A stretch of 63,960 nucleotides of DNA, filler included, from Octopus bimaculoides (taxonomy: Eukaryota), in NCBI RefSeq assembly GCF_001194135.2. It is 4 parts of 4 records of this genome, joined end to end, with 100 filler letters (N's around TTAATTAATTAA, not from the genome) between each part and the next. Parts side by side here need not be neighbours in the genome. Positions count along the whole stretch, not along the records: positions 1 to 19,092 come from NW_026300832.1; 3 more parts are not named here. One strand, written 5' to 3'. Below the pieces are notes generated by a model. It did no database searches. It worked only from the letters and a program-made list of their open reading frames with translations, and was not told the origin of the DNA. A program made the position numbers and the translations under genes. Below, one piece after another: positions 3,222 through 10,400 of this stretch (its first letter is position 1; each line of letters opens with the position of its first letter).

Positions 3222-3231
3222 TTTATATATC

Positions 3232-3382
3232 ATCATCATTATCGTTTAACGTCCGCTTTCCATGCTAGCATTGGGTTGGACGACTTGACTGAGGACTGGT
3301 GAAACCGGATGGCAACACCAGGCTCCAATCTAAATTTGGCAGAGTTTCTACAGCTGGATGCCCTTCCTAACGCCAACCACTC
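3232..3382 (-). mobile_element. RTE-tail-type short interspersed repeat (family C), truncated
   Basis: Reverse complement of ...aggaagggcatccagctgtagaaactctgcc...gacgttaaacgatgatgatg, which recurs many times in the window. Confidence 0.8.
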
Positions 3383-5054: not shown

Positions 5055-5156
5055 CATACCAGCGATGAAACCAACCAGTAATGTAGCCAGGGCAAAGATC
5101 ACATAACAGCCCCATTCGGGGATTCCGTACACTTCTGTCATCGTTGAGTACAGTGA
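5055..5156 (-). CDS. TMX1: TMX1 exon 6 (transmembrane helix)
   Basis: ttttattctag| ... ATG|gtgagt, 102 nt. Encodes SLYSTMTEVYGIPEWGCYVIFALATLLVGFIAGM. Confidence 0.95.
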
Positions 5157-5229: not shown

Positions 5230-5690
5230 CGTGTCTGGAAAATTTGCAGTATGAAATTTGGCTATATACAAAAATTTTGCTGTAAGACAAATTTATGGTG
5301 AGACATATTTGGCGCATGATAAATTTGCCAAAAACCAAATTCAATGCGAGACAAATTCCCCACAAGACAAATTTGTTGTTAGGCAAATTTGAAGCAAGGT
5401 AAATTTGAGATAAGACTAATTTGCCATAAGGCAAATTCAATGTGAGACAAATTTGTTGTTAGGCAAATTTGAAGCGAGGTAAATTTGAGATGAGACAAAT
5501 TTGTTGTTAGGCAAATTTGAAGCGAGGTAAATTTGAGACAAGGTAAATTTGCCATAAGGTAAATTCAATGCAAGACAATTTCGCTGTGCCAAATCTGCCA
5601 GGAGACAAATCCAATGCGAAACAAATTCGCAAAGAGACAAAATTTGCCAGGAGATAAATTCACTGCGAGACAAACTTGCTTGTATGGACA
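5230..5690. repeat. Degenerate ~15-16-bp array (RCAAATTTG core) with ~47-bp higher-order copies
   Basis: agacaaatttgttgttaggcaaatttgaagc.aggtaaatttgagat occurs at about 5365, 5445 and 5493. Confidence 0.8.
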
Positions 5691-6098
5691 ATGATAAAGC
5701 TTATATGAGCATTTTCTAAAATAGTAAAAAGAAACAAACAAAAAAAACCACCACAATAAAAGGTTTTATGAAAGCATTAAATAGGAAAGTCTTGATTCAA
5801 ATAGTTTTAAATCTGAGAGCGAGAGAGATGCCATAACAGTATCGAATAATAAAATTTATTTGCCAACAGAATGTGGCAGTCTTATGCAACCCATACCAGC
5901 ATGAACAACGGACATTAAATGATGTGTGTGTGTATTTGTGTGCTTGCCAATTTATTTTTCACATTAGACCACATTATATCATTGTAATCAGTGTGAACTC
6001 AACCAGGGTACATCTATAAGGAAAGCGGACTCACCCTGAATAGACTAACAATGAGATTGAACTCACCCAGAGCGGAGACGAAATGAAAATGGACTTAC

Positions 6099-6144
6099 CC
6101 GAATGAACATGGCTGCCTTGAAGAATAAACTGAGGCTTGACATC
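6099..6144 (-). CDS. TMX1: TMX1 exon 5
   Basis: tctttcccacag| ... CGG|gtaagt, 46 nt. Encodes MSSLSLFFKAAMFIR, compared with human MSSMSALFQLSMWIR. Confidence 0.93.
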
Positions 6145-6639
6145 CTGTGGGAAAGATTCGGATAGGAAAAAGCTTTAAAACAACTAAAACAAACATATAC
6201 ATACATATATATATATACACGCATATATATACACACACACGCATACATATATACACGCACGCATACATATATATATATACATGCACGCATGCATACATAT
6301 ATACACACACACGTGCATACATATACACACACATACATATATATATATACACGCACATGCATACATATATATATACATACACATGCATACATATATATAT
6401 ATATGTGCACACATGCATACATATATACACACATGCATACATATATATATATATATACACACATGCATACATATATACACACACACATGCATATACACGC
6501 ACATGCACACATATACACACGCAGGAACACATACTCACACATATACACACGCATGAACATATACACACATATATACACACACATATGTACACACATATAT
6601 GCACAAACATATTCTACTGCAGACGCTATTGGCTCTGTG

Positions 6640-7136: not shown

Positions 7137-7615
7137 AAAATCAATTTGTAAATCGTTTATTTTTGTAATTCCCTCATCTTCGGTTCTTTAACATATTTTT
7201 CCTATTATTTTTTGTGCATAAATTTAATNNNNNNNNNNNNNNNNNNNNNNNNNNNNNNNNNNNNNNNNNNNNNNNNNNNNNNNNNNNNNNNNNNNNNNNN
7301 NNNNNNNNNNNNNNNNNNNNNNNNNNNNNNNNNNNNNNNNNNNNNNNNNNNNNNNNNNNNNNNNNNNNNNNNNNNNNNNNNNNNNNNNNNNNNNNNNNNN
7401 NNNNNNNNNNNNNNNNNNNNNNNNNNNNNNNNNNNNNNNNNNNNNNNNNNNNNNNNNNNNNNNNNNNNNNNNNNNNNNNNNNNNNNNNNNNNNNNNNNNN
7501 NNNNNNNNNNNNNNNNNNNNNNNNNNNNNNNNNNNNNNNNNNNNNNNNNNNNNNNNNNNNNNNNNNNNNNNNNNNNNNNNNNNNNNNNNNNNNNNNNNNN
7601 NNNNNNNNNNNNNNN

Positions 7616-7768: not shown

Positions 7769-8770
7769 TATCATCATCATCATCATTATCATTTAATGTC
7801 TGTTTTCCATGCTGGCATGGGTTGGACAGCTTGACTGAAATGTAGTAAGCTGCACTAAGTTCCGATCAGATTTGACATGGGTTTCTACAGCCGGATGTCC
7901 CTCCTTAATGCCACTGGTATTGGAAAGGGCAACCAGCTACAAAAACCATGCCAGTGCTGGAGCCATGTAAAAACGCACCCAGTCCACTCTGTTAAGTGGT
8001 TGTCATTTGGAAGGGCAGCCACTCATTTTGGGATAGTGTAGAAAAAAGTGCTTGCCCCAGATTGCGAAAGGCAGTTAAAAACTTGTCAGGACACCTGGTC
8101 CTCTCGCTCGATCAGAGATTTTTATTCCTCCAGTTAATTCGTTGCTCCACTGAGGGGGTCTTATTTCGTGAGTACTTGGTAACCTCACCAGTGCTGGGCC
8201 CACATAAAAACCACCCAGTACACTGTGTTAAGTGACTGGAGTTAGGAAGGGTACCCAGCTACAAAAACCATGCCAGAGAAGACCTTGCCCCTGCTGGTGC
8301 CACATAAAAAGCACCCAGACCACTCTGTAAAAGTGTTGGTGTTAGGAAGGGCATCTCGCTGTAAAAACCTTGCCAAAACTGATCTCACCTGTGCTGATAC
8401 CACATAAAAAGCATCGAATCCACTCTGCGGAGTGGTTGGCATTTGGAAGGGCATCCAGCTGTAAAACCCATGCAAAAACTGACCTCGCCTGTGCTGGTGA
8501 CACATAAAAAGCACTAAGTCCACTTTGCTGAGTAGTTGGTGTTAGGAAGGGCATCCAGCCAAAAACCATGCTCAGGCAGACCTTGCTAGTGCTGGTTCCA
8601 CATAGAAAGCACCCAGCACACTAAAGTGGTTGGCATTAGGAAGGGCATCTGGCCATAGAAACCATTTCAAATCAGACTGGGACCTGGTGCAGGTCTCTGG
8701 CTCATCAGCTCCAGTCAAACCGTCCAACCCATGCCCGCATGAAGAGTAGATGTATGATGAAGATGATGAT
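7769..8770. mobile_element. Family C repeats: a minus copy (7769-7930) and a plus copy with tandemly amplified ~95-bp internal units (about 8200-8770)
   Basis: Repeated aaaaagcacc..gtggttgg..ttaggaagggcatccagct..aaaaccatgcc units ending in a (GAT)n tail. Confidence 0.75.
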
Positions 8771-8873: not shown

Positions 8874-8919
8874 TGGAAAATGGTTGGCAAAGACGTGACC
8901 AGGAATCTTCCGCTTAATC
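8874..8919 (-). CDS. TMX1: TMX1 exon 3
   Basis: cttatttccag| ... |gtaagt, 46 nt. Encodes GLSGRFLVTSLPTIF(H), compared with human GLSGRFIITALPTIYH. Confidence 0.97.
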
Positions 8920-9439: not shown

Positions 9440-9797
9440 TTTGAGCGTGATCACTACCAACGTCACCTTCCTGGCACTTGTGCCAGTGGCACGTGAAAAG
9501 ACATTTGAGCGAGTACGTTGCCAGTGCCGCTGGACTGGCTCCTGTGCAGGTGGCACGTAAAATACACCATTTCAAGCATGGCCAATTGCCAGTACCTCCT
9601 GACTGGCCTTTGTGCTGGTGGCACGTAAAAAGCACCCACTACACTCTTGGAGTGGTTGGTGTTAGGAAGGGAAATCCAGCTGTAGAAACTCTGCCAAATC
9701 AGACTGGAGCCTGGTGCAGCCATCTGGTTTCACCAGTCCTCAGTCAAATCGTCCAACCCATGCTAGCATGGAAAGCGGACGTTAAACGATGATGATG
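9440..9797 (+). mobile_element. Family C repeat
   Basis: Ends gaaagcggacgttaaacgatgatgatg. Confidence 0.85.
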
Positions 9798-9965
9798 AAC
9801 CCCTTAGCATTCAGATTCCTCTGTCAAATGTAATCCTTATTTATTCACATTGTTTTTATTTAATCATGGATTATCTCATAGCTTTGAGATTTCAACGATG
9901 TGATTGTTTATTTTTGGAATGGACACTGTAGGGTGGTGTGAGAGGCTGGATTTGTCTAGTTTGAA

Positions 9966-10400
9966 CATCATCATCATCATCGTCGTTTAACGTCCGCTTT
10001 CCATGCTAGCATGGGTTGAACGATTTGACTGAAGACTGGTGAAACCAGATGGCTACACCAGGCTCCAATCTGATTTGGCAGAGTTTCTACAGCTGGATGC
10101 CCTTCCTAACGCCAACCACTCAGAGAGTGTAGTGGGTGCTTCTACGTGCCACCGGCACGAAGGCCAGTCAGGAGGTAATGGCAAAGGCCGTGCTCAAAAT
10201 GGTGTATTTTATGTGCCACCCGCACAAGAGCCAGTCCAGGGGCACTGGCAACGATCTCGCTCGAAAGTCCTTACACATGCCGTGGGCACAAGTGCCAGAA
10301 AGGCGACGCTGGGCACAGGTGCCATCCCGATTTCGCTTTCGCTTGCCCCAATAAGTCTTCGCAAGCTGAGTTCCGTGTCCAATGAAGGAGACGACATCAT
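9966..10400 (-). mobile_element. Family C repeat inserted into a TTAA-type MITE (halves about 9800-9965 and 10400-10455)
   Basis: Begins catcatcatcgtcgtttaacgtccgc. The flanks join as agtttgaaca|taaaacagg, with a short acatcat duplication. Confidence 0.8.

What the first reader, a model, noticed from the sequence alone, without database searches (positions are those of the whole stretch)
5997..6100. Ladder of 5' splice-site motifs with exact 32-nt periodicity after TMX1 exon 5
On the coding (minus) strand the true donor GG|GTAAGT (GT at 6098) is followed by GG|GTGAGT at 6066, GG|GTGAGT at 6034 and a near-miss GG|TTGAGT at 6002, each exactly 32 nt apart. The 32-mers are otherwise well diverged (ccagagcggagacgaaatgaaaatggacttac / cctgaatagactaacaatgagattgaactcac / ccagggtacatctataaggaaagcggactcac), yet the donor hexamer is what survives. 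That pattern suggests selection on an old tandem duplication. Using the +32 donor shifts the frame and stops early in exon 6 (...RSGHCTQR*). Using the +64 donor includes an in-frame TGA at 6065-6063. Both truncate the protein just before the TM helix, giving either NMD-coupled autoregulation or a soluble or secreted thioredoxin. A U1-decoy or recursive-splicing array is a third possibility. The periodicity and reading-frame effects are seen in the sequence; function is inference.
Basis: partly seen in the sequence, partly recalled or inferred. Interest (0 to 1): 0.72.

Follow-up and report, generated by a model that had tools for sequence, protein, structure and literature searches.

The report
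Repeated splice-donor copies in octopus TMX1
Just after a 46-base exon of the octopus TMX1 gene, the splice-donor signal is repeated four times exactly 32 bases apart; the ladder is a real local duplication found only in Octopus species, and nothing here shows that the extra copies are used or are under selection today.

Summary
On the minus strand, GGGTAAGTCC (6100), GGGTGAGTTC (6068), GGGTGAGTCC (6036) and GGTTGAGTTC (6004) sit exactly 32 nt apart. No other GGGTRAGT occurs on either strand of the window, and 200 shuffles gave no such ladder.

The window is Octopus bimaculoides TMX1.

Similarity between units runs beyond the donor, to position 19, then falls to chance in positions 20-32. This points to a whole donor module copied in a 4 x 32-bp tandem array.

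The ladder is present in O. sinensis and O. vulgaris with the same phase. There the +64 copy reads GGGCAAGT, so its GT is lost. Argonauta hians and Acanthosepion pharaonis have the same 46-nt exon and donor but no ladder.

Between Octopus species the pseudo-donor motifs (2/24 changed) and positions 9-19 (8/44) change about as fast as reference intron (32/270).

Best reading: a lineage-specific tandem duplication leaving two strong, U1-complementary cryptic donors and one dead copy. It is probably near-neutral now. A role as U1-docking enhancer or NMD switch is possible but unsupported. Interest is modest.

The parts
6099..6144 (-). TMX1 coding exon 5, 46 nt (G + MSSLSLFFKAAMFIR), phase 0 at its 3' end
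   Evidence: It is 46 nt and has the same boundaries in O. sinensis, O. vulgaris, Argonauta (two contigs) and Acanthosepion.
6069..6100 (-). Ladder unit 0: last two exon bases plus the true donor, GG|GTAAGTCC, followed by ATTTTCATT (together the 'head') and a 13-nt tail. GT is at 6098-6097.
   Evidence: U1 duplex -11.4 kcal/mol. The head is conserved into Argonauta (GGGTGAGTCCATTTTTCAT).
6037..6068 (-). Ladder unit 1: pseudo-donor GG|GTGAGTTC, GT at 6066-6065. Use would add 32 nt, shift the frame and stop in exon 6.
   Evidence: U1 duplex -10.4 kcal/mol. GGGTGAGT is intact in O. sinensis and O. vulgaris.
6063..6065 (-). In-frame TGA, part of GGG TGA in unit 1. It terminates any read-through or any extension longer than 35 nt.
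   Evidence: Read, in the frame set by exon 5.
6005..6036 (-). Ladder unit 2: pseudo-donor GG|GTGAGTCC, GT at 6034-6033. In O. sinensis and O. vulgaris it reads GG|GCAAGTCC.
   Evidence: U1 duplex -10.1 kcal/mol in O. bimaculoides and -6.7 in the other two species.
5973..6004 (-). Ladder unit 3: dead copy GG|TTGAGTTC with no GT. Its tail holds a 9-nt internal duplication, of which O. vulgaris lacks one copy.
   Evidence: U1 duplex -5.4 kcal/mol. The 21-nt repeat D1 links units 1 and 3.
5055..5156 (-). TMX1 coding exon 6 (SLYSTMTEVYGIPEWGCYVIFALATLLVGFIAGM, the transmembrane helix). The acceptor AG lies just upstream of 5156.
6187..6612 (.). Context: a (TG/TA)n microsatellite ending 43 nt upstream of the exon 5 acceptor. 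It is also present in O. sinensis and O. vulgaris, but not in Argonauta or the cuttlefish.

Best explanation
The ladder is a degenerate four-unit, 32-bp tandem array. It arose in the Octopus lineage when the exon-5 donor module of TMX1 was duplicated locally by slippage or unequal exchange. That module is the last two exon bases, GTRAGT, and about 11 following U-rich bases.

Unit 0 remains the working 5' splice site. Units 1 and 2 are strong U1-complementary cryptic (pseudo) donors. Unit 3 is already dead. The copies are decaying at about the neutral rate.

If the spliceosome occasionally uses +32 or +64, the mRNA carries a premature stop upstream of three further exon junctions. Such a transcript would be expected to be removed by NMD as splicing noise, not to make a product.

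Shown: the array, its phase, its lineage distribution, its U1 complementarity and its substitution pattern. Inferred: the duplication mechanism, the lack of use and near-neutrality.
For: - Exact 32-nt phase at four sites, with none in 200 shuffles. The only GGGTRAGT sites in the window are these three.
- Similarity between units extends beyond the donor to position 19 (P = 2e-5). So a whole module was copied; the hexamers did not converge independently.
- The same array, in the same phase, is present in three independent assemblies: O. bimaculoides, O. sinensis and O. vulgaris. This rules out an assembly artefact.
- It is absent from two Argonauta hians contigs and from Acanthosepion pharaonis, which have the same 46-nt exon and the same donor. 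The donor is therefore older than the ladder, and the exon splices without it.
- Between-species change is 2/24 in pseudo-donor motifs, 8/44 in positions 9-19 and 7/52 in tails, against 32/270 in reference intron.
- The +64 GT is lost in O. sinensis and O. vulgaris, and the +96 copy is dead in all three species.
- Orthologous units are about 86% alike and paralogous units about 57%. So there has been no concerted evolution since the species split.
- All available protein models use the canonical exon 5-exon 6 junction.
- There is no RNA structure signal (z = -0.66; 1 compensatory pair of 38) and no Rfam match in the ladder.
- The ladder is not part of the SINE-like element next to it.
Against: Similarity between units is strongly uneven: 83% in positions 1-10, 61% in positions 11-19 and 31% (chance) in positions 20-32. 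Clustering tests gave P = 0.018 and 0.003.

A whole-unit duplication followed by uniform neutral decay cannot give this profile. The profile mirrors the constraint on a real donor, since the unit 0 head is conserved into Argonauta. That argues for past selection on the copies, or for short-tract gene conversion from unit 0.

The +32 and +64 copies pair with U1 almost as well as the true donor, and better than the exon 1 and exon 3 donors. Strong competing donors 32-64 nt downstream would be expected to be used at least sometimes, and so to be selected against if harmful.

The cross-species test has little power for the 24 motif sites: 2 changes were seen and about 3 expected.
Confidence: 0.5

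Rival explanations
1. The pseudo-donors are intronic U1 snRNP docking sites that act as a splicing enhancer for the very short (46-nt) exon 5. U1 bound at +32 and/or +64 would recruit U1-70K and SR-protein contacts and strengthen exon definition without being used for cleavage. The natural U1-binding element in PAH intron 11 and engineered exon-specific U1 snRNAs work this way.
For: - U1 duplex energies of -10.4 and -10.1 kcal/mol, against -11.4 for the true donor.
- The sites lie in the first about 70 nt of the intron, the region where exon-specific U1s and the PAH element act (PMC3349419; PMC5933811).
- Exon 5 is only 46 nt. In Octopus a long (TG/TA)n microsatellite lies 43 nt upstream of its acceptor, which could make it a vulnerable exon.
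- The head/tail profile of unit similarity looks like the constraint profile of a real donor module.
- The 32-nt spacing is below the roughly 40 nt at which double U1 occupancy shifts use to the downstream site (Eperon et al., as cited in PMC5933811).
Against: - Argonauta and the cuttlefish have the same 46-nt exon and no ladder.
- Positions 9-19 and the pseudo-donor motifs evolve at about the neutral rate between Octopus species, and the +64 GT is lost in two of the three.
- The co-occurrence of microsatellite and ladder rests on a single lineage.
- No binding or splicing data exist.
Confidence: 0.25
2. The downstream donors are genuine alternative 5' splice sites. They yield frame-shifted or stop-containing mRNAs, giving NMD-coupled down-regulation of TMX1 or a truncated soluble thioredoxin domain without the transmembrane helix.
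For: - The frames are as stated. The +32 donor gives ...FIRVSPFSFRLRSGHCTQR*, and longer extensions hit the TGA at 6065-6063.
- The stop lies upstream of the exon 6, 7 and 8 junctions. This is the usual NMD configuration (general knowledge; not tested in cephalopods).
- The +32 site is intact, with the same frame effect, in all three Octopus species.
- The sites are strong.
Against: - No annotated isoform or protein model uses them.
- They are lineage-restricted and not measurably constrained.
- The +64 site adds nothing to +32 functionally, because the stop comes first, and it is lost in two species.
- A soluble product would carry 16 unrelated residues and no retention signal, so that part is pure inference.
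Confidence: 0.15
3. The heads of the units are kept alike by a DNA-level process and not by function. Short-tract gene conversion, seeded at the identical donor decamers and templated by the selectively frozen unit 0, would refresh the 5' part of each unit while the tails drift.
For: - Similarity falls in a gradient away from the decamer: 83%, then 61%, then 31%.
- The inferred ancestral unit 2 head differs from unit 0 at about 1 of 19 sites, while the tails are unrelated (my inference).
- Small local duplications are frequent here: the 9-nt duplication in unit 3 and the 11-nt repeat D2.
Against: - There is no sign of conversion since the species split. The derived A of the O. bimaculoides true donor is not in its other units, and orthologous units are far more alike than paralogous ones.
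- Tracts under 20 nt between diverged repeats would be unusually short.
Confidence: 0.1

Closest known systems
Cryptic (pseudo) 5' splice sites made by tandem duplication of an exon-intron junction; competing duplicated 5' splice sites as studied in model substrates (Eperon et al., cited in PMC5933811)
   Same: Head-to-tail copies of a donor with near-equal U1 complementarity lie a few tens of nt apart in the same intron. The upstream copy keeps the reading frame and the downstream copies would not.
   Different: This is a natural four-copy array with an exact 32-nt phase, kept in three species. It is neither a two-copy experimental construct nor a disease allele. Use of the copies is unknown.
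Intronic U1 snRNP-binding splicing enhancer of PAH intron 11 (PMC5933811) and engineered exon-specific U1 snRNAs (PMC3349419)
   Same: A 5'ss-like, U1-complementary sequence sits shortly downstream of the real donor of a vulnerable or short exon, at about the position where such binding promotes exon definition.
   Different: The PAH element is a single site with functional proof from patient mutations and minigenes. Here there are two to three phased copies, no functional data, no conservation outside Octopus and no measurable constraint.
Alternative 5' splice-site use coupled to nonsense-mediated decay (unproductive splicing)
   Same: Use of either downstream donor would introduce a premature stop upstream of later exon junctions.
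   Different: There is no evidence of use. Classical cases are deeply conserved, and this one is not.
Recursive splice sites (pyrimidine tract-AG|GTRAGT)
   Same: GTRAGT motifs lie inside an intron.
   Different: No 3' splice-site half abuts the GT. Units 1 and 3 have ...CTCTGG|GT and ...CCCTGG|TT. Unit 2 has TTCAGG|GT, with the AG one base out of register, and it reads TTCCGG|GC in the other two species. The intron is only 942 nt.
Minisatellite / degenerate short tandem array
   Same: Four head-to-tail units of constant length lie in a repeat-rich intron flanked by other tandem arrays.
   Different: The array starts exactly at an exon-intron junction and carries a functional signal. Unit similarity is strongly uneven along the unit, and overall identity (about 57%) is below what TRF detects.

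Membership tests
5' splice-site-like (U1-complementary) element | Match to MAG|GTRAGT and stable pairing with the U1 snRNA 5' end | tested here: met
   The +32 site scores 7/9 and -10.4 kcal/mol, and the +64 site 8/9 and -10.1. The true donor scores 8/9 and -11.4, and the exon 6 donor -10.6. The +96 copy fails (TT, -5.4). The U1 5' end sequence was taken from general knowledge, not from an octopus U1 gene.
Tandem repeat array | Head-to-tail units of constant period with similarity above chance outside the motif that drew attention | tested here: met
   Positions 11-19 give 33/54 pairwise matches against 13.8 +/- 3.3 (P = 2e-5). Autocorrelation peaks at lags 32 and 64. There were 0 matches in 200 shuffles. 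TRF itself did not call the array.
Selectively constrained intronic element | Between-species substitution rate clearly below that of neighbouring intron | tested here: not met
   Pseudo-donor motifs 2/24, positions 9-19 8/44 (9/43 against O. vulgaris), tails 7/52, reference intron 32/270. Power is low for the 24 motif sites. Constraint on positions 9-19 is not seen.
Selectively constrained intronic element | Presence in distant relatives that share the exon | tested here: not met
   Argonauta hians (L003, L007) and Acanthosepion pharaonis (L004) have the 46-nt exon and the donor but no ladder.
Recursive splice site | Pyrimidine tract and AG immediately 5' of GTRAGT | tested here: not met
   The dinucleotide before each GT or TT is GG. 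The only nearby AG (unit 2, TTCAG|G|GT) is one base out of register and is not conserved (TTCCGGGC in O. sinensis and O. vulgaris).
Alternative 5'ss coupled to NMD | Premature stop upstream of a downstream exon junction when the alternative site is used | tested here: met
   The +32 donor stops 17 nt into exon 6, and longer extensions stop at 6065-6063. Exons 6-8 follow.
Alternative 5'ss coupled to NMD | Transcripts that actually use the alternative site | not testable with these tools
   No RNA-seq access. The protein collection holds only canonical-junction models. Two further protein searches found nothing relevant.
Intronic U1-binding splicing enhancer (PAH intron 11 type) | U1 snRNP binding at the site, and loss of exon inclusion when the site is mutated | not testable with these tools
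   Only complementarity and position could be scored. The defining experiments are those described in PMC5933811.
TMX1 (thioredoxin-related transmembrane protein 1) | Thioredoxin domain with a CPAC active site, followed by a single transmembrane helix, and orthology to annotated TMX1 | tested here: met
   WCPAC motif at about 10836. Pfam Thioredoxin E = 8.5e-15. Best hits are cephalopod and mollusc TMX1, E = 6e-110. Eight coding exons were located.

The most novel reading that the evidence does not exclude
The array is a naturally evolved, phased set of U1 snRNP landing modules. Each module is a donor-like decamer plus a U-rich tail, and the set was kept for a long period in the Octopus stem lineage. 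It would secure definition of a 46-nt exon that sits behind a long UG/UA microsatellite, or it would set a tunable level of unproductive splicing of an ER oxidoreductase. On this reading, the head/tail conservation profile of the units is the footprint of that selection.
Probability: 0.2. Interest if true: 0.55.

Novelty: new member of a known kind. Interest (0 to 1): 0.33.

Why it matters
If the copies are inert, this is a clean natural example of how a local duplication seeds strong cryptic donors beside a real one, and of how they then decay: one intact, one half lost, one dead. That is useful for calibrating splice-site predictors in cephalopod genomes, but it is not surprising.

If the copies bind U1 and help define the 46-nt exon, it would be a natural multi-site counterpart of the PAH intron 11 enhancer and of therapeutic exon-specific U1s. 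If they are used as donors, it would be a lineage-specific unproductive-splicing switch on an ER thiol oxidoreductase.

Either functional case would be of moderate interest to splicing biologists. It is easy to test with existing octopus RNA-seq.

Tried and rejected
- **Chance:** rejected.
- **Assembly artefact:** rejected, because the same array is in three independent assemblies.
- **Part of a transposable element:** rejected. The abundant SINE-like element begins only after unit 3 in O. sinensis and O. vulgaris. Its many other copies carry no ladder, and no other ladder-like hit exists in the loci. The single 15/19 match at window position about 3536 is within chance expectation for about 230 kb searched.
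- **Structured RNA or editing-site duplex:** z = -0.66 and no covariation. The exon-intron inverted repeat I1 (6119-6132 / 5948-5961) is AU-rich, and its intronic arm falls in a 14-column alignment gap in O. sinensis.
- **Known RNA family:** none in the ladder. All Rfam hits are sub-threshold matches to the microsatellite.
- **Recursive splicing:** excluded by sequence.
- **Telescripting of nearby intronic AATAAA motifs:** considered, but the first AATAAA (about 5957-5952) lies in that same O. sinensis gap, and such motifs are common in AT-rich introns.
- **Gapped alignment of the unit tails:** MAFFT introduced no gaps and found no hidden similarity.
- **More octopod species or read-through/alternative-donor products:** a 41-aa read-through query found no candidates. 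A C-terminal-half query returned only Argonauta and a cuttlefish exon-6 contig.
- **Literature on cephalopod cases:** searches found nothing specific.

Full report
**What is in the sequence**

Read on the minus strand, the stretch is ...CCATGTTCATTCGG|GTAAGTCCATTTTCATTTCGTCTCCGCTCT GGGTGAGTTCAATCTCATTGTTAGTCTATTCA GGGTGAGTCCGCTTTCCTTATAGATGTACCCT GGTTGAGTTCACACTGATTACAATGATATAAT.

The decamers GGGTAAGTCC, GGGTGAGTTC, GGGTGAGTCC and GGTTGAGTTC start at 6100, 6068, 6036 and 6004, so the spacing is exactly 32 nt three times. GGGTRAGT occurs nowhere else on either strand of the 19-kb piece, and GTRAGT occurs only 15 times in all. The paired motif at this spacing matched three times, against none in 200 dinucleotide-preserving shuffles.

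**The gene**

The window is contig LGKD02005947.1 of Octopus bimaculoides. Locus L001, fetched through the RefSeq protein, contains the window sequence exactly.

The minus strand encodes TMX1:
- A WCPAC thioredoxin exon lies at about 10849-10734.
- Pfam Thioredoxin scores E = 8.5e-15.
- The best database hits are cephalopod and mollusc TMX1.

Eight coding exons can be placed:

| Exon | Coordinates (minus strand) |
|---|---|
| E1 | to 13678 |
| E2 | 10849-10734 |
| E3 | 8919-8874 |
| E4 | from 7692, running into the N gap 7229-7615 |
| E5 | 6144-6099 |
| E6 | 5156-5055 |
| E7 | about 4333-4218 |
| E8 | 2045-1944 |

Exon 5 is 46 nt (G + MSSLSLFFKAAMFIR) and ends in phase 0. Exon 6 begins SLYSTMTEVYG... 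and carries the transmembrane helix.

The +32 donor gives ...FIRVSPFSFRLRSGHCTQR*. Anything longer meets the TGA at 6065-6063.

**Anatomy of the units**

Counting pairwise matches per column among the four 32-mers gives three zones:

| Unit positions | Pairwise matches | Identity |
|---|---|---|
| 1-10 | 50/60 | 83% |
| 11-19 | 33/54 | 61% |
| 20-32 | 24/78 | 31% |

Against random 32-mers drawn from non-repetitive intron of the same window, positions 11-19 are far above background (13.8 +/- 3.3; P = 2e-5). Positions 20-32 are not (P = 0.18).

Shuffling columns shows that the clustering of conserved columns is itself unlikely: P = 0.018 for a 10-column window and P = 0.003 for 19 columns.

So what repeats is a 19-nt 'head', GGGTGAGTYCAnnyTCATT, and not just the hexamer. 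The tails are unrelated, and gapped alignment does not rescue them. Because the period is exact, the array must have arisen by duplication of whole 32-nt units. The heads then stayed alike and the tails did not.

**Strength of the copies**

I paired positions -3..+8 with the U1 5' end (sequence taken from general knowledge):

| Site | U1 duplex (kcal/mol) |
|---|---|
| True exon 5 donor | -11.4 |
| +32 copy | -10.4 |
| +64 copy | -10.1 |
| +96 copy | -5.4 |
| Exon 6 donor | -10.6 |
| Exon 1 donor | -5.4 |
| Exon 3 donor | -7.0 |

The +32 and +64 copies are therefore bona fide strong 5'ss-like sequences.

**Other species**

I fetched the orthologous loci of O. sinensis (L002), O. vulgaris (L005), Argonauta hians (L003 and L007) and Acanthosepion pharaonis (L004). 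All have the same 46-nt exon 5 and the same donor position.

Both other Octopus species have the ladder in the same phase:
- Unit 0 reads GGGTGAGTCC.
- Unit 1 reads GGGTGAGTTC or GGGTGAGTTT.
- Unit 2 reads GGGCAAGTCC. The GT is gone and the U1 duplex falls to -6.7 kcal/mol.
- Unit 3 reads GGTTGAGTTT.

Argonauta shares only the first roughly 19 nt of the intron (GGGTGAGTCCATTTTTCAT). After that come a CA microsatellite on one contig and unrelated sequence on the other. The cuttlefish has no ladder either.

The working donor and its head are therefore old and constrained. The ladder is confined to Octopus among the genomes I could reach.

**Is it under selection now?**

Mismatches between O. bimaculoides and O. 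sinensis, by class:

| Class | Mismatches |
|---|---|
| Pseudo-donor octamers | 2/24 |
| Positions 9-19 | 8/44 (9/43 against O. vulgaris) |
| Tails | 7/52 |
| Other alignable intron | 32/270 |

Nothing here is slower than neutral, and positions 9-19 are if anything faster. Orthologous units are about 86% alike and paralogous ones about 57%, so there has been no concerted evolution since the split. The test has little power for the 24 motif sites. It does argue against strong constraint on the heads as a whole.

**The unexplained part**

Uniform neutral decay of duplicated 32-mers cannot give heads at 61-83% and tails at chance. Where the species differ in the unit 2 head (5 sites), one species always has the unit 0 state. 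The ancestral unit 2 head therefore probably differed from unit 0 at about 1 of 19 sites, while the tails were already unrelated (my inference).

There are two ways out. The heads may have been selected as donor or U1-binding modules for a long time before the Octopus species split and relaxed since. Alternatively, short-tract gene conversion templated by the frozen unit 0 may have kept refreshing them. I cannot decide between these with three closely related species.

**Other readings tested**

- No RNA structure: z = -0.66, and one compensatory pair of 38.
- No Rfam family in the ladder.
- Not part of the SINE-like element that follows it in O. sinensis and O. vulgaris.
- No other copy of the head in about 115 kb of loci beyond one chance-level match.
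- Recursive splicing is excluded, because no AG abuts the GTs.

**Comparison with what is known**

U1 bound to 5'ss-like intronic sequence just downstream of a real donor can enhance exon definition. This has been shown for PAH intron 11 (PMC5933811) and is exploited by exon-specific U1 snRNAs (PMC3349419). The former paper also summarises the classical competition rules for duplicated donors.

The octopus array works like neither until shown. It resembles them in complementarity and position. It fails the conservation test that would be expected for an essential enhancer of an exon that is identical in species lacking it.

**Verdict**

The most likely account (about 0.5) is a lineage-specific tandem duplication of the donor module. 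It left cryptic donors that are now drifting, and any use of them produces NMD-bound noise.

| Alternative reading | Probability |
|---|---|
| U1-docking enhancer | about 0.25 |
| Regulated unproductive splicing | about 0.15 |
| Conversion-maintained but functionless heads | about 0.1 |

Public octopus RNA-seq would settle use within a day's work.

Noticed in passing
window 7229-7615 (N gap) and 6145-6186: The assembly gap removes the 3' part of exon 4, which in O. sinensis encodes KRWQNVDPISWWFRPDSLM. The RefSeq model XP_014790208.1 (P0001) bridges the gap by reading intron just upstream of exon 5 as coding (NCFKAFSYPNLSHR). That segment of the annotated O. bimaculoides protein is an artefact.
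   Followed up: yes
window 6187-6612: A long (TG/TA)n microsatellite ends 43 nt upstream of the exon 5 acceptor. In O. sinensis and O. vulgaris it fills most of the roughly 470-nt intron 4. Argonauta has (CT)n(TA)n there, and the cuttlefish has a roughly 100-nt intron with no repeat. Sub-threshold Rfam 'mir-297/466' hits here are low-complexity artefacts. From memory, UG repeats near an acceptor can promote exon skipping (CFTR exon 9); I did not test this.
   Followed up: partly
window 6102-6112 and 6082-6092 (minus strand): The motif CCATGTTCATT at the end of exon 5 recurs 20 nt later as CCATTTTCATT, right after the donor hexamer (repeat D2). Argonauta shows the same arrangement (CCATGTATATT ... 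CCATTTTTCAT). The same motif forms positions 9-19 of each ladder unit.
   Followed up: partly
window 5300-5674: A separate tandem array with a 16-nt base period and 48/80-nt higher-order periods (AAGGCAAATTTGANNN on the plus strand) lies inside the same intron 5. It has no evident sequence relation to the 32-nt ladder.
   Followed up: no
window 5887-5924; L002 10200-10600; L005 12856-13300: An abundant SINE-like element (starting ...ATCATCATCGTTTAATGTCCGCTTTCCATGCTAGCATGGGTTGGACGG...) lies immediately downstream of ladder unit 3 in O. sinensis and O. vulgaris. Only about 38 nt of it remain in O. bimaculoides. Other copies are at window 3229-3382, 7775-7905, 9536-9798, 9969-10233 and 16408-16674. 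Part of the element forms the 100-nt tandem array at 8182-8677.
   Followed up: partly
window 16618-17022 (minus strand): An open frame ends ...SPDLNIIEQLWCILEKQIRSRYPPPSSLQELETVLAEEG..., resembling the C-terminal part of a Tc1/mariner-type DDE transposase. Pfam DDE_3 scores only E = 9e-4, below the curated cut-off. It is probably a decayed transposon remnant upstream of TMX1.
   Followed up: partly
window 5948-5961 and 6119-6132: A 14-nt AU-rich inverted repeat could pair exon 5 with the intron and loop out the whole ladder. The intronic arm falls in a 14-column alignment gap in O. sinensis, so it is probably fortuitous.
   Followed up: yes
window 14028-14537: A tandem array of 93-95-nt units (about 4-5 copies, 76-78% matches) lies upstream of TMX1 exon 1. 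I did not examine it.
   Followed up: no
window 8874-8919: Exon 3 of TMX1 is also exactly 46 nt. Its donor (CCA|GTAAGTAC) has no downstream donor copies.
   Followed up: no
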